Assembly: GCF_006345805.1 (NCBI RefSeq)
Contig: NC_043003.1
Span: 91,264,001 to 91,328,000 of the forward strand
DNA length: 64,000 nucleotides
From: Octopus sinensis
Taxonomy: Eukaryota
Direction of reading: 5' to 3'
The position numbers and the translations under genes are program-made. Below the pieces are notes generated by a model, which had not been told where the DNA came from, searched no databases, and was given only the letters and a program-made list of their open reading frames with translations. Shown here piece after piece: positions 1,261 to 57,345 of the stretch. Each line of letters begins with the position of its first letter. Positions within the stretch are counted from its first letter, which is position 1.

Positions 1261-1361
1261 CACTTGTTAGTTAATTTCCGTAAAAGAATTTTATTTATTT
1301 ACTTTTGTTTTAAAGTGAGAGAAGAAAGTGAAAAATGTATGAACGTGTATATGAAATGGAC

Positions 1362-1412
<51 letters not shown>

Positions 1413-1685
1413 ACCTACACATACATGAGAACACACACGTTCTCTCTCTCACACAGACGCGCGCGCGCACATGTACATACAAAAAAGATGTATGCATATA
1501 TATTGATGTATGTACGTATACATGACAACACACCCCTTCAGTCGCTCTCTTTCTCTCTCTCTCTTTCTCCCTTCTTATCTCTCTTCCTCTCTTCCGATTA
1601 TATAACTTGACGCTCATCAGTTAGCTAATATGAAAGGGAATATGGCAACTGCTTTCTATTATCGTGTGTGTGTGTGTGGTGTGTG

Positions 1686-10105: not shown

Positions 10106-10410
10106 GCACCAGTGGCCCCACCAGCTGAAAAAGTAACCGCACCTCCACCTCCTGCGAAAACAGAAAAGGTGAATGCGGAGGAGCTAAGAGCACAAGTGGA
10201 AAAAGCGGCGGAAATTGAATGGTCTACGGTCTCAAGAAGGAAAAGAAGAAGGAGGAAAAACACTCACTCCACTGATACTAGTTCCCACCCTACCCCACAG
10301 ACACTAACAACATAACAACGACCCGTGGACTATGGTCAAAATGCATCCAAGAAACTGACTTTATCAGATTTATCAAAATTTATCTCTGATATAATGAAAT
10401 TAAAACATAT
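10106..10410 (+). pseudogene. Tx1/L1-type ORF1 remnant, 3' part
   Basis: Removing the mariner restores the frame PPPPVIAPVAPPAEKVTAPPPPAK..EWSTVSRRKRR. Confidence 0.7.
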
Positions 10411-10419
10411 TTCAATATC

Positions 10420-10447
10420 ACACACGTATATACATATATATATGTAT

Positions 10448-10508
<61 letters not shown>

Positions 10509-10755
10509 CATATATATATACATATAGTATATACATATATATATATACATATATATATACATATAGTATATAATATATATATATATATATACATATATAT
10601 ATACATATAGTATATACATATATATATACATTATATATATACATATATAATATATACATATATATATATACATATAGTATATACATATATATATATATAT
10701 ATATACATATATATATACATATAGTATATAATATATATATACATATAGTATATAC

Positions 10756-10806
<51 letters not shown>

Positions 10807-10925
10807 AGGTAAAAAATTATCATGCTGGCCACTTGATAATTTCGACACTTAAATATCGATGTATCCTCATATATAAATTTATATACATATATATATACAT
10901 ATAGTATATACATATATATATATAC

Positions 10926-10997
<72 letters not shown>

Positions 10998-11044
10998 TAT
11001 ACATAAATGTATATATAGTATACACACACACACACATATATATA
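10420..11044. repeat. Compound (TA)n microsatellite with recurring atatatacatatagtat subunit; similar arrays at 13135-13332, 35765-36090, 56820-57310
   Basis: Direct inspection. Confidence 0.95.
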
Positions 11045-11880
11045 TGCTGAGGATATGCGTAAGCTCGCAAGAAATGAAGCCAGTATGCTCCGATGGATGT
11101 GTAATGTCAGTGTTCATACTCGACAGAGTGTAAGTACCTTGAGAGAAAAGTTGGACCTAAGAAGCATCAGTTGTGGTGTGCAAGAGAGACGTTTGCGCTG
11201 GTATGGTCATGTGACGAGAATGGCTGAAGATAGTTGTGTGCAAAACTACCACACCCTAGCGGTTGAGGGAACCTGTGGAAGAGGTAGACCCAGGAAAACC
11301 TGGGACGAGGTGATGAAGCACGACCTTCGAACTTTAGGTCTCACCAAGGAAATGACTAGAGACCGAGACCTATGGAAGTATGCTGTGCATGAGAAGACCC
11401 GGCAGGACAAGTGAGACCATAACCCATGGCCTCTACCTGGGATGTAGCCAGTCAACTTATGCATACCTTTCCTTCTTGGGACACAAAACTCCACTTGTGA
11501 CGACCTGTTGAGGCAAGAGGAAATCAGAACCAAAATCGAAGTCGATCAACATCAATGGAAATTGCAGCTGTGATACCAGTGCCAGTGGCATGTAAGCGAA
11601 CCATCCAATCGTGGCCGTTGCCAGCACTGCCCCACAGGCCTCCGTGCCGGTGGCACGTAAAAAGCACCATCCGATCGTGGCCGTTGCCAGCCCCGTCTGG
11701 CACCTGTGCTGGTGGCACATAAAAAGCACCCACTACACTCACGGAGTGGTTGGCATTAGGAAGGGCATCCAGTCGTAGACTGGACCTGGTGCAGCCTTCT
11801 GGCTTCCCAGACCCCAGTTGAACCGTCCAACCCATGCTAGCATGGAAAGCGGACGCTAAACGATGATGATGATGATGATG
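11045..11880 (+). mobile_element. 5'-truncated RTE LINE (ORF C-terminus + 3' UTR + (GAT)n tail)
   Basis: [27 protein letters not shown] nearly identical to 34890-35253; ends ggacgctaaacgatgatgat. Confidence 0.92.
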
Positions 11881-12069
11881 ATATATAGTATATACATAGA
11901 TGTAAATGCATACCAAAACAACTATACAACTTCATATATATACAAACAAATACAAGTATATAAGGAATATATACATACATACACATGTATATATAACCCC
12001 ACAAGTAATTATACATCATAGTTTAAATATGTAAAAACATAATACCAATACCAGTATAAGCCAGACTAC

Positions 12070-13075: not shown

Positions 13076-13178
13076 TAATACTGTAATTGTTCCATTGTTG
13101 TTGTTTTTTTGTTTTCCCGTTTGGATTAAAATTATATATATATATATATATATATAATATACATAAATATACATATAC

Positions 13179-13209
<31 letters not shown>

Positions 13210-13275
13210 TATAATATACATATACATATATATATGTGTGTAATATATATATATATTATATATATATATATATAT

Positions 13276-13332
<57 letters not shown>

Positions 13333-13335
<3 letters not shown>

Positions 13336-13525
13336 GGCTGCCTCCTCGTTATCGAGTATGGCCATTGCATGAAGCTTAACTGTTATTGGTGCTGTGATCG
13401 AATGTGACTTTTTAGCCCAGCTAAAGATCTACAATGTCTTGTACAGAATTGGCAACTACAACCTTTACTGGTAATAGCCGGCTGTAGTTGTAACTAGGCT
13501 TCATGTACCTTTGCATGTCATTTAA
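13333..13525 (-). mobile_element. RTE LINE 3' end fragment
   Basis: Translates [22 protein letters not shown], followed by tail gcaatggccatactcgataacgaggaggcagcca. Confidence 0.75.
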
Positions 13526-14126: not shown

Positions 14127-17100
14127 TTATACTAAGTATTGTTTGTATCTAGAGAAAGTATACCCCAATTTATGAAGACATGAAACATTCCATTCCTTAA
14201 GATTATTAATAATCGGTAAATTAGTCCTAATTATAAAGAAAATCTCATTAATGCATAATGAGCATTTTCTGTTCCTATTATTATATGCTGGTGCAGATAT
14301 AAGTATTTTCCATTGCAAATTGTAATTGAATTTTTTATTCTTAAGCTCCCATATATATGCACTTAACCCTGTAGAATTACTCCTATTTCTATTTTTAAAA
14401 ATATTCTGTGATAATTAAGTCTCTGTTTCAAATTATTCTTAGTAGTCCTAATATAGACTCTATTATCATATTGTGTACTTTTCATGCAGCCATTATTAAA
14501 TACACAATTTTCTCTAATTCTACAATTGCACCTATTAGCTTGTTGTAGTTGCTTTATTTTATTATGATTAATTTCTACTGCATTATTTTTAATATTATTA
14601 TTGTTAATATTATTATCATTAACACTTATTATTCCCATATCCATCGGCATGTTATTATTGATAATATTGCTCTTATTTATGTTATATTTTATGTTATTAT
14701 TATTATTACCTATGGTGTTATCATTACTAATTCTATTAATATTATCCATTCTATTATTATTCGTTATAGTATTACTATTACTATAGTTTCCATTTCGATT
14801 ACTATTACTTATATTGTTATAATTATATCTTAAGTTATAGTAAGGCACATTTGTGTTACCTAAATTATTTATTTTATTTAGATAGAAATAATCAAGTTTT
14901 TTATTATTAATTGAGGATATTGATGGTGGCCAGATTATGAGTAAGGCTGTATCCTATTCTAATAGTTTTATTATTAATTATGTCACAATATTTGTTCTTT
15001 CCTTTTCCAAAATGCTTGTTTATTAAATTGAAAATATTTCTTACTACGTTAGTTTTAATTTGCATGGCATATGGAATTATTAACCACAGTGTATCAGTAA
15101 TGTTATATTGATTACACGGCTTACCTATATTATTTATAAATTCCCTATTCTTATTATTTCTTCTGTACTTTCTACAATCAGTAAAATTGTTATTATTATA
15201 ATTTTGACTAAATGCTTTATTGTAGTTATTATTGTTATCATAGTTCTTATTAACTTTACTATTTCTATTATTATTATTAATATTATAATTATTAATATTT
15301 AATATATGATCTTTAATCCCGTTTACACTATTATTAGTATTATTTCTATTCATATTAATATTATATTTGTGATTATTCTTTTTATTTGGATTATTGTTAT
15401 GCATGTCTAACCAATGTTTATTTGTAGTTGTTAATTTATTCTTAGTATTAAGGTTGTTATTGGGGATATATTTTATTTTAACATTATATCCTGCCCTATG
15501 TAATGCTGAGTTATACTTTTCACTGGGTCTATTAAATATCTCTTCATTCAAGGAAAGATTAGAAATCCTTTTACTTATGTTTAGTAGTAGTGCTTTTTTA
15601 ATTTGTGGAGGGTGATTACTAGAATTTTGTTTCACATAAGGTTCATGGAGTCCAGTATTGAGGTTACAATTAACATCGAGATAATTAATAGAATAATTCT
15701 CATTTTCAATAGTAATGGATAGGCCGAAACTCTTAAAAAATTTATGCAATCGTTTCTTGAGTATTTCTAGTCTTCTATTCGATAGGTTCTTAACTAAAAA
15801 TAAAGTGTCGTCTCTATAGAGGCCGCCATTTAATTCAGGGAATTCTCTACTTAAATTATCTAATAAATAACTCCCTACTAAATCAGTCGTTTCCGCTGAA
15901 TCCGGCAAACCCATTGTAATGTCAAATAAGTCAGGCATATCCTTCCTAGCCCATAATTTATTATCGAATTCTATAACTGTTTTTCTTGCCGTCAAAATTA
16001 CCTTAATTTCTTTCATGCTAATATTAGTATATTTTCTTACAAAAATTAAAACTTTGTTAAGTATTATTGGGTTAATTGATGAGTAATAATTTTGGATATC
16101 AAATTGAATTAATTTATGGTTAATACTGTTATAAACCTTAATACTGGAAAACCATTCCCAAGCACCTTATGTATTCTTCCATAAATTAAGCTTAATTTTA
16201 TTTCTTATAATAGGTATGTATTTATCTAGAATTAATTTACTTAATTTACCTAAGTCCGATTTATTTGGACAGATTAATCTAACCTGAGTAATATTAGGGA
16301 AATTATCTTTATGGTCTTTAATCATTATTCGTGGTCTATTTATCTTCTAGATTATAATCATACATAATATTTCTAGCTTCCAAATTCAATTTTCTAAGTG
16401 TATCAAAATTGTAATTGAATTTTTTATTCTTAAGCTCCCATATATATGCACTTAACCCTGTAGAATTACTCCTATTTCTATTTTTAAAAATATTCTGTGA
16501 TAATTAAGTCTCTGTTTCAAATTATTCTTAGTAGTCCCAATATAGACTCTATTATCATATTGTGTACTTTTCATGCAGCCATTATTAAATACACAATTTT
16601 CTCTAATTCTACAATTGCACCTATTAGCTTGTTGTAGTTGCTTTATTTTATTATGATTAATCTCTACTGCATTATTTTCAATATTATTATTGTTAATATT
16701 ATTATCATTAACACTTATTTGTAATTTCTCTGAGTAATAACTCATGGTAAGTCTGAGTGTCAATGTTGTATATATTACTAGTTTTATCCGAATGAGTTAA
16801 GATACTATCTTTACTCTTAAGAGTTCTGATAATTTCCTTCAATTTCCTTTGGTATGGATTATTCCTTAGTGGGTGATTCTTGAACTTAATATTCCTAATG
16901 GTACTCCATAAATCCTGCTCGAAGTTATCCAAGTATTTATTGGGTGGTGGTGCTTTTCTTGATTTAAAAGAATTACTAGTAAATTCAATTATTTCTTCAT
17001 AATTACTTCTTATTCTAGTGTAGTTGTGGTCGTTTTTATCTTCATAGGTCAATTTTGTGATATTTTTCTCATGGTTGTAGATTTTCCATCTAATCCTGTG

Positions 17101-18985: not shown

Positions 18986-19205
18986 GTCATCATCATCATC
19001 ATCGTCGTTTAACGTCCGTTCTCCATGCTAGCATGGGTTGGACGGTTCGACCGGGGTTCTGGGAAGCCAGAAGGCTGCACCAGGCTCCAGTCTAATCTGG
19101 CAATGTTTCTACAGCTGGATGCCCTTCCTAACGCCAACCACTCCGTGAGTGTAGTGGGTGCTTTTTACGTGCCACCTGCACAGGTGCCAGGCGGGGCTGG
19201 CACCT
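18986..19205 (-). mobile_element. 3' UTR fragment of the RTE family at 33757 and 11045
   Basis: (CAT)n then cgtttaacgtccg..ggatgcccttcctaacgccaaccactccgtgag, the reverse complement of that 3' UTR. Confidence 0.85.
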
Positions 19206-33758: not shown

Positions 33759-35253
33759 AGTCATTCCCAATGACTGGTGTAGCAGCATAATAGTCAACTG
33801 CTACAAAGGTAAAGGTGACGCCCTAGATACAAATAACTACAGGGGCATGAAGCTGCTGGATCAGGTAATGAAGGTTACGGAGAGGGTTATAGCCCAACTA
33901 ATTGGAGAGAGAGTTAGCTTAGATGAGATGCAGTTTGGGTTCGTGCCAGGGAAAAGTACTACTGATGCTATATTCCTGGTAAGACAGCTGCAGGAGAAAT
34001 ACCTAGCCAAAGATAAGCCCCTGTACCTGGCTTTTGTTGACATGGAGAAAGCCTTCGACAAGGTCCCCCGATCCCTTATCTGGTGGTCATTGAGGAAACT
34101 AGGGATAGATGAATGGTTAGTGAGAGCTGTGCGAGCCATGTACAGAGACGCTGCTAGTAAGGTGAGGGTTGGCAACAAGTACGGTGAAGAATTCCGGGTA
34201 GAGGTTGGGGTCCACCAAGGTTCAATCCTCAGTCCCCTCCTATTTATCATAGTCCTCCAGGCAATAACAGAGGAATTTAAGACAGGATGCCCCTGGAAGC
34301 TCCTCTATGCTGATGATCTTGCTCTAATTGCTGAGTCACTATCAGAACTGGAGAAGTTTCAGGTGTGGAAGCAAGGATTAGAATCGAAGGGCCTTAGAAT
34401 CAACCTAGCCAAAACCAAAGTCCTAATAAGTAGGAAGGTAGACCAATCACAAACGCCTTCAGGTAGATGGCCCTGCTCGATCTGTAGAAAAGGTGTAGGT
34501 AGAAACTCTATAAGATGCACCAAGTGTAAGCTATGGACACATAAGAGGTGCAGCAATGTCAAAGGAAGGCTAACTAGGAAGATGGTTTTTGTATGTGGCA
34601 GATGCTCAGGAGCAATAAACACTGAAAATGTGCAGAGACCAACTTCTACAACATTCCAGGGAGAAAAACTAGTAGTTGATAGCTTCCGTTACCTAGGTGA
34701 CCAAGTCAGTAGTGGGGGTAGGTGTGCTGAAAGTGTAACGGCTAGAATAAGAATAGCCTGGGCAAAGTTCAGAGAGCTCTTACCCCTGCTGGTGACAAAA
34801 GGCCTCTCGCTTAGAATAAAAAGCAGACTGTATGTTGTATGTGTACGAACGGCCATGCTACATGGTAGTGAAACATGGGCTGTGACTGCTGAGGATATGC
34901 ATAAGCTCGCAAGAAATGAAGCCAGTATGCTCCGATGGATGTGTAATGTCAGTGTTCATACTCGACAGAGTGTAAGTACCTTGAGAGAAAAGTTGGACCT
35001 AAGAAGCATCAGTTGTGGTGTGCAAGAGAGACGTTTGCGCTGGTATGGTCAAGTGACGAGAATGGCTGAAGATAGTTGTGTGCAAAAGTGCCACACCTTA
35101 GCGGTTGAGGGAACCTGTGGAAGAGGTAGACCCAGGAAAACCTGGAACAAGGTGGTGAAGCACAACCTTCGAACTTTAGGTCTCACCAAGGAAATGACTA
35201 GAGACCGAGACTTATGGAAGTATGCTGTGCATGAGAAGACCCGGCAGGACTAG
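33757..35253 (+). CDS. RTE reverse transcriptase (5'-truncated) with Cys-rich PHD-like insert
   Basis: Open frame from GVIPNDW; NYRG, QFGFVPG, FVDMEKAFD, GVHQGS, LLYADD, YLG; CSIC..CTKC..H..C..CGRC. Confidence 0.9.
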
Positions 35254-35762
35254 TGAGACCATAACCCATGGCCTCTACCTGGGATGTAGCCAGTCGACTT
35301 ATGCATACCTTTCCTTCTTGGGACACAAAACTCCACTTGTGAAGACCTGTTGAGGCAAGTGGAAATCAAATCAAATCAAATCAAATCAGATATCAGAAAT
35401 CAGAACCAAAATCGAAGTCAATCAACATAAATGGAAATTGCAGCTGTGATACCAGTGCCGGTGACACGTAAGCGAACCATCCGATCGTGGCCATTGCCAG
35501 TGCCGCCCCAACTGGCCTCCGTGCGGGTGGCACGTAAAAAGCACCATCCGATCGTGGCCGTTGCCAGCCCCGTCTGGCACCTGTGTGGGTGGCATGTAAA
35601 AAGCACCCACTACACTCACGGAGTGGTTGGTGTTATGAAGGGCATCCAGCCGTAGAAACACTGCCAGATCAGACTGGGCCTGATGCAGCCTTCTGGCATC
35701 CCAGACCCCAGTTGAACCGTCCAACCTATGCTAGCAAGGAAAGCAGACGCTAAATGATGATG

Positions 35763-35765
<3 letters not shown>
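33757..35765 (+). mobile_element. 5'-truncated RTE LINE with open ORF and complete 3' UTR
   Basis: Starts at the edge of a (TA)n array and ends in (GAT)n; RT ORF inside. Confidence 0.95.
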
Positions 35766-35825
<60 letters not shown>

Positions 35826-35978
35826 ATACATATATACATATACATATATACATACATATATACATATATATATACATATATACATATATATATACATATA
35901 TACATACATATATACATATATACATACATATATACATATATACATACATATATACATATATACATACATATACATATA

Positions 35979-36028
<50 letters not shown>

Positions 36029-38030: not shown

Positions 38031-40821
38031 CAAAGGAGGCACTAACTGTGACATCCCACTAAATCCTACTAATCTCATGTGAGGAGTAGCACCAGATTTA
38101 AACTTGAAAATCAGTTTTGAGGCTGCTTAAATATGGTGTTTGGACATTGAAAGTATGTTTCTTCTTAGCCCAATTTTGAATATCAAGCTGTAGTTTAACG
38201 TGCGTAAATCTGGCAGTGTTAATTGGCTGAGTGTTTGTAAAGCAGAAAAGACACTATACTTGCCAGATATTGAACTCGTGCAAAGGGGAAAAGCCAGATA
38301 CTGAACAAGAGCAATGGGGAAAAACTAAGTACTTCTACCACATTTACACTGTAACCCGCAAGTTTTCTTGCGAATGGGAAATAAACTTCAATCGTTCTGA
38401 ATTTATATACAAGTATATATAATTTAAATGTAATCGTTTCAAATGATTCTCTTAAATGTCGCTGTACTAAAATTAGTTTAGGAAGACAATTCAGGAATAT
38501 TTTAAAATTCATTGATTTTAATAAATTTCAACTTATTTACTAAATTTGTGCAAGCGTTTTCTTGTATTAAGTTTCAAAACCAATTTTAAAACCATAACTA
38601 ACCACTTCATAAATCTACCATTTCACCATAGGTGGAGGAAGTAGAATTTAAAGCTCAGTTGATTTTTATCGTGTTATGATTCTATCACAGAATCCTTTCA
38701 ATTACAAAGAGAAAATTGTTAGAGTACAATGATATACTCACAGCATCCCATCCATCGAAGAAACGATTAAATTATTTCACGGATGAATCAACTTTATAAT
38801 GTGGTCTTGATTTTCCTGCCCGTGGGAAAAAAACGTAATGGTCACGTCTGCAGTGCCTTCAGTTTGTCCAATCAGCACCAACTCGCTGACTGGAAAATGT
38901 CTTATTTACAAGACCATTGTTAAATACAATAAATATTGTAGTTGTCCGAGTAGAATTGCACAAGTGTGACTACGTATATGATTACACAATGAGACGCTTC
39001 TTGAAAAAGTCAAAAAGACTCGATCAGTTTGTTTACGTTCAATGTACACTCACCTCACATTTTGCTTATACCTATATGTGCACACCTGTAAACACACGCA
39101 CGTGGTTTGTTTTACAGATAAAGTCCATAAAAATTCAATGATTGGAACCCCACTTTTGACAATAGGTTTGCTCAGAGTCAACCTGTAGCTAAACACTGAT
39201 ACAGTGTATTTGAAAAGGTTGTATGTATACAATACACACGCGCGCGCGCGCGTGTCATTTTTCGTTTTGACTTGCAGAATTGTCATTTGGATCAGCTAGT
39301 TTTGTTCGTTAATTTCCGCAAAAATTTTTTTATCTATTTACTTTTGTTTTCATGGCGTGTAGAGGCGACATTTGCTTTGAAGTGAGAGCAGAAAGTAAAA
39401 TGTAGCTACGTCAGAGAGAGAGAAAAAAAAAACACCCATTATCTTGCATATACACGTACATATATAAAAACATATGCATACATCTTTTTTATATGTATGT
39501 CTGTATATATTTAAGAGAGAGAGACAGAGGGCCACTTAAACATGCAAAAAAAAATACGTGAGAACACACACACAAAAAGGTGTATGCATATGTATTTATG
39601 TATGAACGTATACATAACACCCCTTCACTCGCACACACGTCCATACATCTTTCACTTTCTCCTCACTTTCTTCTCTCACTTCAAAGCTAATGTCGGCTTC
39701 CACACGCCTTGAAAACAAAAGTAAATAAATTTTTACGAAAATTAACGAACAATAATGACATGTATGCGAGTTAAAACGAAGGCTCGTCATACATAGACAC
39801 ATACACGCATATATACCGTAAATCCTCAAGTATAGTCCGCCGGGGATTTTTAGGGGGTTGTACCTCTGAAAAGCCTAAACCTTGTGTATAATACGCACCC
39901 CTCCTCTAACTTGAGTTAAGGAGGTCTATATAACGTCCTTGGTTTGTTAAAAACGTATACAGTAACGTCCTTTATTATTATTGTATATATAACATAATGC
40001 AAACGTGTAGCTTTTTTGTGCATTTTGTTTGCAGAAAATAAAGAAATAACAGTAATAACGTCAGTGAAAAATAAATATTAAGTAAATTGCCATTACATAT
40101 TTATCACTATCAGTTACAAAAGCAAAAGCAAAAACATTTATTCAAATCCTTCAAATTCAACATCACTTTCAGCATCAAATAACTGTTCCATTTGTTCCTC
40201 CGAAAACATGTCAGCATCATTGTAGTGCAAATCTCCATCATCGTCAGATTCATAGTCAACATCAGAAGATTCACTTTCATTTGTTTCATCTTTCCATACA
40301 ACATACACTGGATGGTACTGGAGTACCATCCAGTGCAGACGATATAAAACATTAGATAAAACTTTTCACAATAATCTGAGGATCAAGTTCATTCCATGCA
40401 TACACGATCCATTTGCTTATCAAAGTCAGGTCGGGAGTGCGAAACCTTCCACTTTTAGTGAACGACTTTATGCCTAGCCATGTGATGCTTTAAATTCTGA
40501 CTCATTAAGTTTTATCTTTTTAGCAATGAGTTTTGCCTGTAGCCTCAAATGTACTGTATTAATGGCTATTTATTTCTTCTCCTTAACCTGACATTGCTTT
40601 CGTCAACATCAAATTTTCTTCCGGCGACCCTATTACCATGCTCTTCAGCATATGATATAACTTCAAGTTTAAACATAGCTGAATAAGATCTACGAAGCAT
40701 TTTATGGACATGTAATGTATAAAATGTTTTATTGGCGATTAATGTACAGGTTTAAGTCCCGCTTATAAAAACCTAGTAAAGACCCACAGTTGTTCAAACA
40801 TTTAATACTGGCATTTGGCTA

Positions 40822-42520
40822 CCGACGCTTACCGAAATAAATCCGTAATCTTTCCCTGTTATTTTCTGTGGGTGGTCCCACACGCACTCCGTTATAGCGA
40901 CGCGCACGCTGTCCCTCCAGGGTCGTCCCGCTGTGCCATTGCCAGTGATATTAATCGCGGCCTTGGACATCATTTCGGCGGATGTCTTATTCGGTCATTT
41001 CTTGTCTGGTAAACTCCCGGATCACCTTGGGAGTGGCGTATATTCCGGTGGGGACCCCGCAGGAGTATAAGCGCTTCGACTGCGGGGAGGTTATGTTATT
41101 GGGCTGGCTCACGTACAAGAGGGCAGGTCCAGTCGTCCCGCACCCTCAGCCCTGCGGTGAACGGCGCAGGGACCCTGAAGCTCAATACTCGCCTTGCTTC
41201 GGGGGATCCGCGGGGGGAACTGACAGGGTGACCGACAGAATCGCGTGGTTTAGTTTGTGATAGGCCTCGGGAAATCGAATTCGAAAAGGCTGATGTGGAG
41301 ATCAACCTAACCTCAAGTAACGGCGCCCGGGCGTGGGTCTCGCCGCCTGATCCCCGTCACTGGATCAACTCCTCAGCATGTTAAACGTGCAGAGCATCGC
41401 AGTTCTGCTTAGCAGTCGCATAAAGCGCTTGTCAATAATACGTAGCGCGGCCAGCGCCTCCTCGGCCTCGGCGCTCGAAGCGCCGCAGGCTCCTATCGGA
41501 CAACCGAACACGCGTACCGGTAGACCCAGCTCCCTTTGGAGGAGTGGTATCAGCGGCCGGTACTTCCTTTCTTTCTCGCGTGCGGCGTCCCTCAGCGCCG
41601 TGTCTTGCTCGTACCTGACGGTCACGTCTATAACGACTACTTCACTCGAGTTGCGGAATACTAAATCGGGGATTAACCTGGACCCCGATACTCGATAGAC
41701 CGGTTCCCAGCCGGTCATCCAGCCGTACCGCTCGGCTTCCCTAGCCACCAGCCGGCATAATCGATTGTGCCTGGCCAGCCTCTGCGTTTTGAGGCGTGAG
41801 CACTGGCCACTGATGTGGGAGATCGTCTCCGACGCGCTTTTACACTTCCTACAGGTGCTATCGCCTCGGCCTCCCCGAGTGAGGCATTCGCGGGTGGGAA
41901 ATGTATTGGTCCGCATCTTGAGTATCCCCAAGTAGCATTCCTCAGATATCCCGCCCGGTCGCGTCATCCAGCTATTACCGATCTGGTCCGATTTGAAGGC
42001 GGCAGCGCAGACACCCTGGACCGGTTGCGATTCCCACCTCTTGGCGTGGGTGAGGCGGAGGTCCGGGGCGTACAGGTCGCCGTCATTTTGGACAGACGGA
42101 ACATCGTATAGGGCGGCCAGCTCCGCGTTCTTAGTGGAGAGCCGGGCAGCCTGAGCTATCGTTCGAACGGCATCGTAATCTGAGTTCAATAAACGCTGAT
42201 TCCTGCGAATCACGTTTTTTGGAATAGCGCGCGCTAACTGACAGAGGCTGAGGCCCCCGTCCCTTCTTGCACTATACAGGAAGCTTTTTGACGTTGAATC
42301 GGGGAGATGGAGCATCCTACGCGCCCCACCTCTTATTGCCATATCCAGTTCATCAAGTCCTACTTTTGGTGGTATCGCCTGTGTTAATCCGTAAAACAGG
42401 CTCGGCAGGTAGTACTGCTGTAGCATCATGAACTTTTGACGGGGCTTTAGCGAAGCCCGGCATATATCGTCTATGCATCGTGATACGGTCTCCACCGATG
42501 TCTCTCTGTTCTGTGTCGAC
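40822..42520 (-). mobile_element. 5'-truncated R2 retrotransposon outside rDNA
   Basis: GC-rich island; ORF with LKPRQK, GGLSL, CCHC knuckle and PDLVF..DVT..EKERKY nuclease; ~543-nt 3' UTR followed directly by TAGCCAAATGCC. 5' boundary approximate (42497-42521). Confidence 0.88.
41365..42495 (-). CDS. R2 protein C-terminal part (post-RT region, zinc knuckle, restriction-like endonuclease)
   Basis: 376 codons without stop: CRKCKSASETISHISGQC, RHNRL, IPDLVF, VIDVTV, EKERKY. Confidence 0.9.
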   Translation of the reverse strand: METVSRCIDDICRASLKPRQKFMMLQQYYLPSLFYGLTQAIPPKVGLDELDMAIRGGARRMLHLPDSTSKSFLYSARRDGGLSLCQLARAIPKNVIRRNQRLLNSDYDAVRTIAQAARLSTKNAELAALYDVPSVQNDGDLYAPDLRLTHAKRWESQPVQGVCAAAFKSDQIGNSWMTRPGGISEECYLGILKMRTNTFPTRECLTRGGRGDSTCRKCKSASETISHISGQCSRLKTQRLARHNRLCRLVAREAERYGWMTGWEPVYRVSGSRLIPDLVFRNSSEVVVIDVTVRYEQDTALRDAAREKERKYRPLIPLLQRELGLPVRVFGCPIGACGASSAEAEEALAALRIIDKRFMRLLSRTAMLCTFNMLRS

Positions 42521-43149
42521 CAGAGTATCTATTGTTTGCCACGGTAATGATGCAAATTGTCAATACAAACAGCAGGATGAACTATTTAGCGCTAAACTAT
42601 TAAGGACAATTCGTGCGTAATTAAGCCAGCAACACCTAGTTGAAAAAAGCACTTCCACGCATGCGTAATACAATAATGGTGATGTTCTTAACTGTTATAT
42701 GGGAATGTAAATATGTTTGCAAATTGTTTTTGTTACATGTTATTCTGTGTTCTGAATACTTTTATTTTAATAAATGTTGCTTACTGCAAGTTATGGATGA
42801 TTCTTTTATGACTTCATTGCTTTCAGGCTTAGCTTAAGGTATTTTCGCGCCCGACATCAGAAAATGCGTCTGAATAATAATTACCGGACAGCAAATAGAG
42901 ACTCGGACATTGCATAGAAAATATTTTTCATTTTTAACCTCGTATATAGTACGCACTAGGGATTTTGACCTATAAACTTTGGGGAAAAAATGCGGATTAT
43001 ACTCGAAGATTTACGGTATTTATTTATATATATATACATACATAAACACATATATATATATATGTGTTTATGGAGTAGTCTCACAAAATATATAATGCAA
43101 TAAAGGAAAGAATCTTGTAGACACGATATTTTGAGAACGGATCCTCATG

Positions 43150-44573: not shown

Positions 44574-45522
44574 TTAACTTCGAGCGTTCAAACCCGGTGA
44601 AAACAGCCGTCTCGGAAAAGCAACCGATTTTTCAACGATTGAAGGTTTTGTTTGAGTGCAAATGCAATGTGTTATTGTGTTTTCAATGTCAAGAATTTCT
44701 TTATTTGAACAATTTGGCAACTGTTCACTAAATTCAAATTTGTTGTAGTCGTTTTCATTTTTGTTCACACACTGAGATTCTAACTGAATTTCTTCATTCT
44801 GTTTCAACTTTCCTCCCACTTCTAAAATATTAGTAATACCCATTTCTGTTCTATTGGAGTGAATATTATTTTGGTCGAGTTCCTCCGTTTGGGATTCATG
44901 TATTTTGACCATACTTTTGACACTACACTTCTCAACATCAGTTTCAGTCAAATTTTCGTTATCTGGAGTTTTGTCGGAAGATGTCCAGATCGCCTGGAAC
45001 GAAATTTCGGGGGGATCGCGCCAATCAGTTAATACGGAAAGCCCCAGTGATATGGGTTTTCCAATATTTGGGGTAGTTTTTACATCGTATCCCCAAAAAT
45101 CTTTCTCTTTTAAGTACATGATTGATATTGGTGCTTTAGAGTCTTTCGTCGCAGACAAAGTTGCATCGGATTCGAGCTTCTTGGGCCAACTGGATTCTGA
45201 AGGTTCACATTCTGAAATGGCTACCGGATGTACAACTGGATCAACTTCACTTTTGAATATGTCCCAGAGTTTTTCAGAACGGATTAACCACTGGCTTTTC
45301 GTTCTAAGAGATTTCACGATGTGATTAATTTCCAGGTGTTGCTGTCTCTGGAAAACATCGAGTAATCTATGAAAATGAGCCATTTCGTTAATGTTGGATT
45401 CATCGCTTTTACTGCTTGTCCAATAACAGGAGTCGGTTTGCCGTAAATGCTTTTTCAACTCCAAAAGATCGTGTCCAAAAAGCGATGGCTGCGTGTGCTT
45501 TCCTAGAGATAACATCAGGTTT
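44574..45522 (-). CDS. Probable terminal coding exon of an unidentified host gene
   Basis: 313+ codon non-repetitive ORF; acceptor tttctatttctttttcag at 45523, exon entering in phase 2; TAA at 44574; ATTAAA downstream near 44460; no TE motifs recognised. Confidence 0.6.
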
Positions 45523-53717: not shown

Positions 53718-54330
53718 TATACTTCACGGCAGTGATCCAACCACGGAAGTCCGGGCCTAGTCCAGCCGCCTTGAGTACTGGTGGTCTACCCTATCAAAAG
53801 CTTTACTTTGGTCCAAATGGGCCAATGCCCCACTTTTACCGGATAATTTACCAACCCTATCTAAGGTGTAGCGTAGGTGATGGAGATTGTCCTGGATCGA
53901 CCTGCCTGGAATGGCGCATGTTTGCGCCCTCCCAACAAGTTTCTCCGCGACACGCGCCAACCTCTTTGCCAGCACCTTGGCCAAAATTTTAAACTCTACA
54001 TTAAGTAGAGTTATGGGCCTAAAATTACTAATATGGTCCCCCTCGCTCGGATCTATTCTGATCAGCGTCACCACTGCCCGACTCACTGAGCTGGATATCC
54101 TTCCATTCTGCTGCCAGTTTGTGTAGACGCAGGACAACAAGTATCCGAACAAGTCCAGCATGCTACAATAAAATTCATAGGTCAGACCATCCAGCCCCGG
54201 CGATTTGTCCTGGATGCACTCAGCCAGTACCTCTTCAACCTCCGTAGCCGTAATTGGCCTACATAGCATTCCGCCTCCCGCGCCCCCGTGCATCGGCCGT
54301 GACATTCCTTCTACCACGGCCAACGTACAC
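53718..54330 (-). pseudogene. Tx1-clade LINE RT fragment
   Basis: KSPGLDGLTYEFY, NFRPITLLNVEFKILAKVLAKRL, QTCAIPGRSIQDN, LDQSKAFDRVDH. Confidence 0.9.
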
Positions 54331-54398
54331 AATTTTGTTCCATTTCAGTTACTTCATTTTTACATATTACAATCTTTTTTTCCTTTATATTATATGTC

Positions 54399-56454: not shown

Positions 56455-57345
<891 letters not shown>

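What the first reader, a model, noticed from the sequence alone, without database searches (positions are those of the whole stretch)
40810..42530. R2 retrotransposon inserted outside rDNA at a 28S-target-like site
Seen: a GC-rich R2-type ORF (zinc knuckle + PD..D nuclease, no stops) and 3' UTR end at ..gcgtcGG|TAGCCAAATGCCagtatt on the minus strand, and neither flank is rDNA. Known: R2 inserts in 28S rDNA at TTAAGG|TAGCCAAATGCCTCG. The 14-nt match lies exactly at the junction. TCGGT also occurs at the candidate 5' junction (42494-42498), and ACTCTGGT near 42521 is an alternative. Inferred: either off-target insertion at a natural mimic in the pogo, or 28S read-through copied from the RNA template. 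The open ORF suggests a recent event and an active R2 lineage.
Basis: partly seen in the sequence, partly recalled or inferred. Interest (0 to 1): 0.9.

Follow-up and report, generated by a model that had tools for sequence, protein, structure and literature searches.

The report
Stray R2 copy with 28S tail
A dead, front-truncated copy of the ribosomal-gene-specific jumping gene R2 sits inside an old pogo transposon far from any rRNA gene, and the 12 bases of 28S rRNA at its end came in with it, most likely copied from a read-through transcript, so the landing site is not a 28S look-alike.

Summary
On the minus strand a GC-rich 1,717-nt block (42526..40810) interrupts an AT-rich, decayed pogo/Tigger element (39816-43016). 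It holds the last 386 codons of an R2 protein, a 543-nt 3'UTR, then TAGCCAAATGCC, the 28S sequence just downstream of the canonical R2 site. There is no rRNA in the 64 kb.

The 3'UTR is 88-89% identical to the published 28S-resident R2-1_OVu and R2-1_OSi of Octopus, so the family is known.

Three related pogo copies that keep this region run straight across the insertion point and have nothing like the 28S motif. The pre-insertion site resembles the 28S target no more than random positions. The "natural mimic" reading is therefore not supported.

Two other 5'-truncated R2 copies, in O. bimaculoides and O. sinensis, also lie outside rDNA. They end in 28S tails of about 90 and 14-16 nt. This favours reverse transcription of R2-28S read-through transcripts at ectopic sites, analogous to LINE 3' transduction.

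The true 5' junction is 42527|42526, not the TCGGT at 42494-42498. There is no target-site duplication and no poly(A). The open frame and undepleted CpG suggest a fairly young, dead-on-arrival copy.

It is an ordinary kind of element in an unusual place, of moderate interest.

The parts
40822..42526 (-). 5'-truncated R2 retrotransposon fragment (1,705 nt): C-terminal ORF remnant plus complete 3'UTR. It lacks the ribozyme/5'UTR, the N-terminal zinc-finger/Myb DNA-binding region and the RT core through motif 7.
   Evidence: GC 57-60% against 33% in the flanks. PDB R2 hits E 1e-53 to 1e-45. tblastn with full-length R2 proteins covers only their last ~400 aa. Pogo homology stops at 42527 and resumes at 40809.
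41365..42525 (-). Open reading frame remnant: 386 codons (LWSTQNRETS...FNMLRS) plus TGA. Covers the RT thumb/linker region, the CCHC zinc knuckle and the RLE (PD-(D/E)xK) endonuclease.
   Evidence: The W at 42522-42520 aligns without gaps to the conserved PW of the YLG....PW motif in 16 R2 proteins. There are 1,216 relatives at E<=1e-10, mostly 1,100-1,350 aa R2-length proteins.
41800..41853 (-). CCHC zinc knuckle CRKCKSASETISHISGQC.
   Evidence: Motif located. Weak Pfam zf-RVT hit over aa 195-234. Aligned to the same motif in R2 structures.
41560..41673 (-). Restriction-like endonuclease core motifs: IPDL ... VIDVT ... EKERKY.
   Evidence: Aligned column-for-column with 'KPDLIF...VVDVTVRFE...EKVRHYK' of 9nl2.
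40822..41364 (-). R2 3'UTR (543 nt). It ends ...GGTAAGCGTCGG. The final GG (40823-40822) could be the R2 terminus or a 2-nt 28S match.
   Evidence: 87.9% (320/364) identical to the R2-1_OVu 3'UTR and 88.8% (318/358) to R2-1_OSi. It shares the block GTGGGACCACCCACAGAAAATAA.AGGGAAA, 24-28 nt before the 28S junction, with octopus loci L006 and L007. No Rfam hit and no significant fold.
40810..40821 (-). 12-nt 28S rRNA tail TAGCCAAATGCC, the first 12 nt downstream of the canonical R2 insertion site, brought in with the R2 sequence.
   Evidence: Unique in the window. Absent from uninterrupted pogo copies. The same sequence follows the R2 3'UTR in L006 (tail ~90 nt), L007 (14-16 nt) and all published R2 entries. 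Window sequence diverges from 28S immediately afterwards (AGTATT versus TCGTCA).
42527..43016 (-). 5' part of the host pogo/Tigger-like DNA transposon (TIR CCGTAAATCTTCGAGTATAATCCGC at 43016..42992; TA duplication at 43018-43017).
   Evidence: Inverted repeat I6. 86-89% identity to the 5' ends of five pogo copies L001-L005. TA precedes the TIR in every copy.
39816..40809 (-). 3' part of the host pogo element. It carries decayed, internally deleted transposase remnants (BrkDBD N-terminus at ~40690, HTH_Tnp_Tc5 remnant, C-terminal acidic tail to ~40140) and the 3' TIR at 39840..39816, with TA at 39815-39814.
   Evidence: Three-frame translation. Protein hits P0005-P0008 with PF09607, PF03221 and PF03184. 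Nucleotide matches of 79-92% to L001-L005.

Best explanation
This is a dead-on-arrival, 5'-truncated copy of the octopod R2-1 lineage, whose functional copies live in 28S rDNA. It was inserted by reverse transcription into an unrelated AT-rich site inside an old, internally deleted pogo transposon.

**Proposed mechanism:**
1. R2 in rDNA is co-transcribed with 28S, and the RNA carries downstream 28S sequence at its 3' end. This is established R2 biology.
2. An R2 protein-RNA complex used a DNA 3'-OH at a non-rDNA position, either from an off-target nick by its own endonuclease or from a pre-existing break. This step is inferred.
3. cDNA synthesis began 12 nt into the 28S tail. It copied the tail, the 543-nt 3'UTR and 1.16 kb of ORF, then aborted just after RT motif 7. 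This is shown by the anatomy.
4. The cDNA was joined to the upstream DNA with no, or at most 1 bp of, target-site duplication, no poly(A), and no loss of target beyond a few bases. This is shown by alignment to uninterrupted pogo copies.

The 28S motif is therefore cargo, analogous to LINE-1 3' transduction, and not a target mimic. The copy has no RT core, no DNA-binding N-terminus, no ribozyme and no promoter, so it cannot move or function.
For: - **R2 identity.**
- **Family.** The 3'UTR is 88-89% identical to the published 28S-resident R2-1_OVu and R2-1_OSi.
- **Clean insertion in a pogo.** Both flanks are colinear with five related pogo copies. With the 1,717-nt block removed, the joined flanks align straight across the junction with L002, L003 and L004. 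Those read ...CAAAAGATCATTAATTACCTCAGG...; the window reads ...CAATAGAT|AGTATTAAATG....
- **No mimic.** None of those copies has the motif. Site-to-target similarity is 17/55 against a null of 14.1 +/- 3.2.
- **Independent precedents.** O. bimaculoides locus L006 is a 5'-truncated R2 on a 117-Mb chromosome, with 83/90 nt of 28S tail followed by unrelated DNA. O. sinensis locus L007 has a 14-16 nt tail. Neither has upstream 28S or other rRNA within +/-5 kb.
- **Tail lengths.** All three tails start exactly at +1 of the R2 site and are short (12, 14-16, ~90 nt). All three copies are 5'-truncated. This is as expected for RT starting near the 3' end of a read-through template.
[quoted passage not shown] Rare non-rDNA R2 copies exist in five Drosophila species (PMC2718515).
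- **Youth.** The 386-codon frame is open, with P(open) <0.06 at 2% divergence with indels. CpG o/e is 1.09, against 0.78 for the window and 0.36 for another RT ORF.
Against: - **Empty sites are not orthologous.** The uninterrupted pogo copies come from other assemblies. They are 95-98% alike but only 86-88% identical to the window copy. The site region is indel-rich, with the window copy carrying extra 10- and 21-nt segments nearby. A copy-specific 12-mer cannot be formally excluded without the orthologous empty allele.
- **RNA versus DNA origin.** One locus cannot separate the two. A broken R2/28S DNA fragment captured at a double-strand break would look the same.
- **No detectable microhomology.** The pogo flank (AGTATT) shows none with the 28S bases that follow the tail (TCGTCA).
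- **Precedents are a different lineage.** L006 and L007 belong to a more decayed R2 lineage (49-56% aa identity), so they are precedents, not siblings.
- **Parent not in hand.** The same-species parent was not available, so the copy's age rests on indirect arguments.
Confidence: 0.78

Rival explanations
1. Off-target R2 integration at a natural mimic. The pogo copy already contained (GG)TAGCCAAATGCC, the R2 protein recognised and nicked it as if it were 28S, and the motif is target DNA.
For: The motif is a perfect 12-14 nt match placed exactly as in a canonical 3' junction. R1 elements are known to insert outside 28S at sites sharing 4-9 bp with their target (PMC2718515). A Gb-sized genome would contain on the order of a hundred chance copies of any 12-mer (own estimate).
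Against: Three related pogo copies that retain this region go directly from ...AAAGAT to CATTAAT... with nothing resembling the motif. There is no upstream 28S half (...CTCTTAAGG) at the 5' junction. Overall similarity of the reconstructed site to the 55-nt target is at background. L006 carries a ~90-nt tail that cannot be a chance mimic, which shows that tails travel with R2.
Confidence: 0.06
2. DNA-level relocation. A piece of an R2-occupied rDNA unit, broken inside the R2 ORF and 12 nt into 28S, was captured at a double-strand break or moved by recombination, without reverse transcription at this site.
For: There is no poly(A), no target-site duplication and no microhomology that would specifically mark TPRT. 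rDNA fragments do disperse in many genomes (general knowledge). L006's ~90-nt tail is equally compatible.
Against: In three of three independent copies (window, L006, L007) the downstream break falls within 12-90 nt of the R2 3' end. None retains upstream 28S, and all are 5'-truncated. That is the signature of synthesis starting at the 3' end of an RNA, not of random DNA breakage.
Confidence: 0.12
3. Assembly artefact. A chimeric join of an rDNA/R2 read with a pogo-containing region.
For: rDNA and R2 are notoriously hard to assemble, and only one copy is seen in the window.
Against: Both sides of the block continue the same pogo copy in register, with TIRs and TA duplications intact at 39814-39840 and 42992-43018. 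A chimera would not restore colinearity on both sides. Analogous copies exist in two other assemblies.
Confidence: 0.02
4. The element belongs to an R2 sub-lineage with relaxed or lost target specificity (R2NS-like) that carries a 28S-derived stretch as a fixed part of its own 3' end.
For: Non-specific R2 families exist (R2NS-1_SMed, R2NS-1_CSi). The oyster R2-1_CGi has copies both next to and away from 28S. R2Hm-B may carry 15 nt identical to 28S at its 3' terminus (PMC5035012). R2-like fragments occur on ordinary chromosomes in two Octopus species.
Against: The closest characterised relatives, R2-1_OVu and R2-1_OSi, are canonical 28S residents. Tail lengths differ among the three dispersed copies (12, 14-16, ~90 nt). 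Only one copy lies in this 64-kb window.
Confidence: 0.08

Closest known systems
R2-1_OVu (Octopus vulgaris) and R2-1_OSi (O. sinensis), 28S-resident R2 elements listed in Table S2 of Genome Biol 2026;27:174 (PMC13188248)
   Same: Same lineage. The 3'UTR is 87.9-88.8% identical over ~360 nt starting at the stop codon. Both are followed by TAGCCAAATGCC....
   Different: Those are full-length elements between 28S halves. This copy is 5'-truncated, sits inside a pogo transposon, keeps only 12 nt of 28S, and is 11-12% diverged in the UTR (another species or an older copy). Their last ~150 nt of UTR and their C-terminal protein sequence were cut in the stored table, so they could not be compared.
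Non-rDNA R2 copies in Drosophila (Stage & Eickbush 2009, PMC2718515)
   Same: Rare, often incomplete R2 copies that are not inserted in a 28S gene and cannot seed the rDNA population.
   Different: Found in a different phylum. In the passages read, that paper does not report a short 28S 3' tail or an empty-site reconstruction for R2.
R1 insertions at non-28S sites with 4-9 bp target mimicry (PMC2718515)
   Same: An rDNA-specific non-LTR element found outside rDNA with an intact 3' junction.
   Different: R1 cases show target similarity and 3-14 bp target-site duplications. Here the target shows no similarity above background and there is no duplication.
LINE-1 3' transduction (read-through of flanking DNA carried to the new site; general knowledge)
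   Same: Downstream flank of the source copy is co-transcribed, reverse-transcribed and deposited at the new locus, marking the source.
   Different: L1 uses poly(A) priming and makes 7-20 bp duplications. Here there is no poly(A) and no duplication, and the transduced flank is the universal 28S sequence, so it identifies the kind of source (rDNA) but not a single locus.
[quoted passage not shown]
   Same: Members or relatives of the R2 clade found at non-rDNA positions, including in a mollusc.
   Different: Those are families whose normal behaviour is dispersed insertion. Here the nearest relatives are canonical, and the 28S tail shows the template came from rDNA.

Membership tests
R2 non-LTR retrotransposon (R2 clade, RLE-bearing) | C-terminal restriction-like (PD-(D/E)xK) endonuclease downstream of the RT | tested here: met
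   IPDL...VIDVT...EKERKY at 41673-41560 aligns to the nuclease of solved R2 proteins (query 149-364 against 9nl2 residues 874-1093, E 1.8e-53).
R2 non-LTR retrotransposon (R2 clade, RLE-bearing) | CCHC zinc knuckle between RT/thumb and endonuclease | tested here: met
   C-x2-C-x8-H-x4-C at 41853-41800, aligned.
R2 non-LTR retrotransposon (R2 clade, RLE-bearing) | Single ORF with a reverse transcriptase domain and N-terminal zinc-finger/Myb DNA-binding motifs | tested here: not met
   This copy starts just after RT motif 7 (YLG....PW), at about residue 690-970 of full-length relatives. The absence is explained by 5' truncation, not by a different architecture. The family's full-length members have these domains.
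R2 non-LTR retrotransposon (R2 clade, RLE-bearing) | Insertion at the canonical 28S site ...TTAAGG|TAGCCAAATGCC... | tested here: inconclusive
   This copy is not in 28S, but its 3'UTR is joined to 12 nt that begin exactly at +1 of that site. Its closest characterised relatives are in 28S at that site. The feature is met for the source and not met for this copy.
R2 non-LTR retrotransposon (R2 clade, RLE-bearing) | 5' HDV-like self-cleaving ribozyme | tested here: not met
   No Rfam hit in 40600-42700 at E<=10. The region is missing because of 5' truncation.
R2 non-LTR retrotransposon (R2 clade, RLE-bearing) | Lineage-specific 3'UTR used for protein binding | tested here: met
   88-89% nucleotide identity to the R2-1_OVu and R2-1_OSi 3'UTRs. 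A conserved terminal block is shared with L006 and L007. Protein binding itself is not testable here.
pogo/Tigger (Tc1-mariner superfamily) DNA transposon (the host element) | Terminal inverted repeats, TA target duplication, transposase with BrkDBD/CENP-B-type HTH and DDE_1 domains | tested here: met
   25-nt TIRs with flanking TA on both sides. The window copy keeps BrkDBD and HTH remnants and has lost DDE_1 by internal deletion. The full-length relative P0008 has PF09607, PF03221 and PF03184.
   L002, L003 and L004 lack it. The caveat is that they are 86-88% identical relatives, not the orthologous allele.

The most novel reading that the evidence does not exclude
Octopod R2 elements may escape rDNA repeatedly, not as a one-off accident. 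R2 complexes loaded with 28S-tailed co-transcripts would insert at non-rDNA nicks. The retained tails (12, 14-16 and ~90 nt in three species) would then be a natural fossil record of where reverse transcription starts on, or where the 3' end lies of, the in-vivo R2 template. How R2 RNA 3' ends are formed is still poorly defined. A genome-wide census of tail lengths would make that question directly testable. It would also measure the real off-target rate of an R2 lineage related to those being developed as gene-insertion tools.
Probability: 0.3. Interest if true: 0.6.

Novelty: new member of a known kind. Interest (0 to 1): 0.4.

Why it matters
R2 is the textbook site-specific retrotransposon, and avian R2 proteins are being engineered for transgene insertion at rDNA. 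Its value rests on near-absolute target specificity.

A cleanly resolved natural off-target event is useful for three reasons:
- The empty-site comparison shows the target had no resemblance to 28S.
- The template carried 12 nt of read-through 28S.
- Analogous events exist in two other octopus genomes.

Together these give a concrete view of what R2 escapes look like. They also suggest a simple census, tail length by locus, that could reveal how R2 templates end in vivo.

For genome annotation, this and similar "uncharacterized protein" gene models in Octopus (XP_052824441.1, XP_029656870.1) are dead R2 fragments.

Tried and rejected
- **TCGGT (42494-42498 and 40827-40823) as a target-site duplication: rejected.** Pogo homology ends 30 nt further upstream at 42527. 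The intervening codons LWSTQNRETSV are in frame and align gaplessly to R2 proteins.
- **ACTCTGGT as residual upstream 28S: rejected.** It is R2 coding sequence (L-W-S).
- **Second copies in the window.** None of the pogo or the R2.
- **Exact-protein look-ups.** The window ORF and P0001 were not on record.
- **Rfam.** Run at gathering threshold on the whole window and at E<=10 on the insert. There was no rRNA, no R2 3'UTR element and no ribozyme.
- **RNA folding of the 3'UTR.** Not better than shuffles (z +0.70), so uninformative.
- **Comparison with P0004 (Epinephelus).** No useful overlap.
- **Pattern scan of JGI metagenome contigs** for the conserved 3'UTR block plus the 28S junction. No hits.
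- **Logan contig L008** (closest protein fragment, 69% aa). It ends before the 3' junction.
- **L006's upstream inverted RT segment as a twin-priming inversion: rejected.** There is no nucleotide-level inverted repeat.
- **Site-to-target similarity at shifts of -8..+8.** Best was 17/55, within the null.
- **Host species.** Not identified. Shared repeats with O. sinensis and O. bimaculoides loci are 77-88% identical, and the R2 UTR is 88-89% identical to O. vulgaris and O. sinensis. This indicates an octopod, but not which one.

Full report
**1. What is in the sequence**

Read on the minus strand, an AT-rich region (about 33% GC) is interrupted between 42526 and 40810 by a 1,717-nt block of 57-60% GC. 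The block opens with an uninterrupted reading frame of 386 codons (42525 to the TGA at 41367-41365). The ORF listing reports it as 376 aa from an internal GTG.

A 543-nt untranslated stretch follows, ending ...GGTAAGCGTCGG. Next comes TAGCCAAATGCC (40821..40810), and then the sequence turns abruptly to AGTATTAAATG.... The 14-mer GGTAGCCAAATGCC occurs once in the window. No rRNA or any other Rfam family is detected in the 64 kb.

**2. It is an R2 fragment of a known octopod lineage**

- **Solved structures.** The ORF matches solved R2 proteins at E 1.8e-53 (9nl2), 7.7e-46 (9nl3) and 1.3e-45 (9dou, R2Tg). It matches Bombyx R2 (8gh6, 8ibw) at about 1e-26. The alignment covers the region after the RT, the CCHC knuckle and the restriction-like endonuclease.
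- **Motifs.** CRKCKSASETISHISGQC lies at 41853-41800, and IPDL...VIDVT...EKERKY at 41673-41560.
- **Wider search.** An exhaustive HMMER search finds 1,216 relatives at E<=1e-10, most of them 1,100-1,350 aa, the length of R2 proteins. They match only through their last ~380 residues. tblastn with five such proteins confirms that the window holds only their C-terminal third.
- **Named relatives.** The nearest named proteins are "uncharacterized" gene models of Octopus bimaculoides (XP_052824441.1, 56%) and O. sinensis (XP_029656870.1, 49%).
- **Published family.** Table S2 of a 2026 survey (PMC13188248) lists 28S-resident R2-1_OVu (O. vulgaris), R2-1_OSi (O. sinensis), R2-1_ORu and R2-1_ECi. The window's 3'UTR, starting at the stop codon, is 87.9% (320/364) identical to R2-1_OVu and 88.8% (318/358) to R2-1_OSi. 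Those two are 96% identical to each other.

The insert therefore belongs to that lineage, about 11-12% diverged. It comes either from another octopod species or from an older copy. Other repeats in the window match octopus loci at 77-88%, which is consistent with an octopod host.

**3. The host sequence is a pogo element, and the insertion is clean**

- **Transposase remnants.** Downstream of the block, the minus strand encodes decayed pieces of a pogo/Tigger transposase: MFKLEVISYAEEHGNRVAGRKFDVDESNV......FKASHGW..., and an acidic C-terminus.
- **Ends of the element.** 25-nt inverted repeats (CCGTAAATCTTCGAGTATA(A/G)TCCGC) at 43016..42992 and 39840..39816 are each flanked by TA.
- **Related copies.** Protein searches found the family (BrkDBD + HTH_Tnp_Tc5 + DDE_1; full-length P0008, 443 aa). 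Five genomic copies were fetched from ENA assemblies as L001-L005. Both window flanks are colinear with these copies at 79-92% identity.
- **Empty-site comparison.** With 42526..40810 removed, the joined flanks align straight across the junction with the three copies that retain this segment:
  - L002 and L004: ...GCCAAACAAAAGATCATTAATTACCTCAGGTCTTT...
  - L003: the same with one extra A.
  - Window: ...GGCAAACAATAGAT|AGTATTAAATGTTTGAACAACTGTGGGTCTTT...
- **Junction features.** There is no 28S-like sequence in the uninterrupted copies. There is also no target-site duplication beyond a possible single A, no poly(A), and no appreciable target loss.
- **Not an assembly artefact.** The restored colinearity on both sides argues against an assembly chimera.

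**4. Where the 5' junction is**

Pogo homology ends at 42527 (...AATAGAT). From 42525 the frame reads LWSTQNRETSVETVSRCIDDICRASLKPRQK. The W aligns, with identical spacing to the LKPxQK motif, to the conserved W of the YLG....PW motif in 16 full-length R2 proteins and in 9nl2.

The junction is therefore 42527|42526. The TCGGT at 42494-42498 is internal R2 coding sequence, and its recurrence near the 3' end is a chance 5-mer. The copy is truncated just after RT motif 7.

**5. Mimic or cargo?**

- **Empty copies.** They lack the motif.
- **No upstream 28S.** None of the upstream half of the 28S target is present at the 5' junction.
- **Background similarity.** The reconstructed site matches the 55-nt 28S target at 17 positions at best, against 14.1 +/- 3.2 for random window positions.
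- **Independent precedents.** Two octopus loci fetched through the nearest protein relatives show the same anatomy.
  - L006 (O. bimaculoides chromosome CM046606.1, 77.3 Mb) carries an R2 truncated at about residue 300-360. Its 3'UTR is followed by 83/90 nt of 28S, with differences including three C-to-T changes at CpG sites, and then by unrelated DNA.
  - L007 (O. sinensis) carries an R2 truncated at about residue 530-600, followed by TAGCCAAATGCCTC(AT) and then unrelated DNA.
  - Neither has upstream 28S or other rRNA within +/-5 kb.
- **Shared terminal block.** All three 3'UTRs share the block GTGGGACCACCCACAGAAAATAA.AGGGAAA, 24-28 nt before the 28S junction. The junction in the window is therefore a genuine R2 3' end at the canonical site.
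- **The GG.** The two octopus copies have AA where the window has GG.

A 90-nt tail cannot be a chance mimic, so 28S tails demonstrably travel with R2 to non-rDNA places.

**6. Mechanism**

R2 has no promoter and is co-transcribed with 28S. [quoted passage not shown]

The simplest account of the window is as follows. An R2 ribonucleoprotein carrying such a co-transcript used a 3'-OH at an unrelated site. It started cDNA synthesis 12 nt into the tail, either because the RNA ended there or because it was primed internally. It then aborted after 1.7 kb.

- **Shown:** the content and limits of the insert, the absence of a mimic in relatives, and the recurrence in other genomes.
- **Inferred:** that the nick was made by R2's own nuclease and not by a pre-existing break, and that the intermediate was RNA and not a DNA fragment of an R2-occupied rDNA unit.

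I favour RNA. In all three cases the downstream boundary lies within 12-90 nt of the R2 3' end, the copies are 5'-truncated, and upstream 28S is absent. This is the polarity expected of reverse transcription, not of random breakage. Three cases are few, however, so DNA capture keeps about 0.12.

**7. Age and activity**

- **Dead on arrival.** The copy lacks the RT core, the DNA-binding N-terminus, the ribozyme and a promoter.
- **Open frame.** In a simple simulation the frame stays open with P<0.06 at 2% divergence if indels occur at a tenth of the substitution rate. With substitutions alone, P is about 0.05 at 8% divergence.
- **CpG content.** CpG o/e is 1.09, against 0.78 for the window and 0.36 for another RT ORF at 33847-35253. 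CpG decay is visible in L006's tail.
- **Host element age.** The pogo copy is riddled with stops, internally deleted, and about 12% from its relatives.

The insertion is thus clearly younger than the pogo copy and probably recent. This cannot be quantified without the same-species parent. An "active lineage" is plausible, since intact R2-1 elements are published for related species, but it is not demonstrated here.

**8. Comparison with what is known, and novelty**

- **Non-rDNA R2 copies.** Reported as rare and often incomplete in five Drosophila species (PMC2718515).
- **R1 at mimic sites.** R1 inserts outside 28S at sites with 4-9 bp of mimicry and makes duplications (same paper).
- **Relaxed-specificity R2 families.** Truly non-specific R2 families, and an oyster R2 with copies both in and out of 28S, are known (PMC5035012). 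R2-like dispersed elements exist in cockroach (PMC7650587).
- **Literature gap.** The searchable literature returned nothing on R2 copies outside rDNA in cephalopods, or on short 28S tails at such copies. The library is incomplete.

I therefore class this as a new member of a known kind: an ectopic, truncated R2 copy. It has a tidy, LINE-1-3'-transduction-like feature that recurs across three octopod genomes.

**9. Limits**

- The empty sites are paralogous or heterospecific relatives (86-88% identity), not the orthologous allele.
- The same-species parent and the last ~150 nt of the published R2-1 UTRs were not available.
- The host species is not identified.
- RNA versus DNA origin is argued from three loci.

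No step needed to be referred.

Noticed in passing
L006:3233-5976 (O. bimaculoides CM046606.1, ~77.30 Mb) and L007:4347-6198 (O. sinensis VCDQ01002200.1): Two further 5'-truncated R2 copies lie outside rDNA. They are annotated as 'uncharacterized protein' genes (XP_052824441.1, XP_029656870.1). Each ends in a 28S tail (~90 nt and 14-16 nt) followed by unrelated DNA. They belong to a more decayed R2 lineage, 49-56% aa identical to the window copy.
   Followed up: partly
window 33847-35253 (+): A 468-aa ORF with a reverse-transcriptase domain (RVT_1, E 1e-26) plus a PHD-like finger. CpG o/e is only 0.36. This is a different, older retroelement.
   Followed up: no
window 53757-54332 (-): A 191-aa ORF with a partial RVT_1 domain. 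It also matches L006 at 72-82% nucleotide identity, so it is another dispersed retroelement fragment.
   Followed up: no
window 39261-39780: A set of nested inverted repeats (arms 39261-39396 against 39665-39780, 81-91% complementary) forms a ~520-nt palindromic, MITE-like element just outside the pogo 3' end.
   Followed up: no
window 11384-11893, 18990-19201, 35226-35783: Copies of an interspersed repeat shared at 77-88% identity with both Octopus loci (L006 7741-7946; L007 627-1204 and 6639-6817). This supports an octopod origin for the window.
   Followed up: partly
window 1264-1545 and 1900-2191: A direct duplication with ~636-nt spacing, visible as paired BLAST hits. It is related to low-complexity sequence near 39300-39730.
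   Followed up: no
window ~10400-11050, 13130-13340, 35760-36020, 56800-57300: Long microsatellite-like blocks that all cross-match the 43017-43072 TA/CA-rich stretch next to the pogo 5' end. Several long spurious ORFs overlap them.
   Followed up: no
window 14907-16016 (-) and 44574-45515 (-): ORFs of 369 and 313 aa with no Pfam match. The second lies 1.5 kb from the pogo 5' end and has CpG o/e 0.99.
   Followed up: no
L001-L005 (ENA assemblies ERZ22157276, ERZ25067576, ERZ25067582): The pogo family is young and probably active in whatever organism these assemblies represent. Copies are 95-98% identical, and an intact 443-aa transposase (P0008) has 18 near-identical cluster members on contigs of up to 1.7 Mb.
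   Followed up: partly
L006:2516-3223 (-): An inverted RT-like segment abuts the truncated 5' end of the O. bimaculoides R2 copy. It is not a nucleotide-level inverted copy of that R2, so it is probably a separate retroelement and not a twin-priming inversion.
   Followed up: partly
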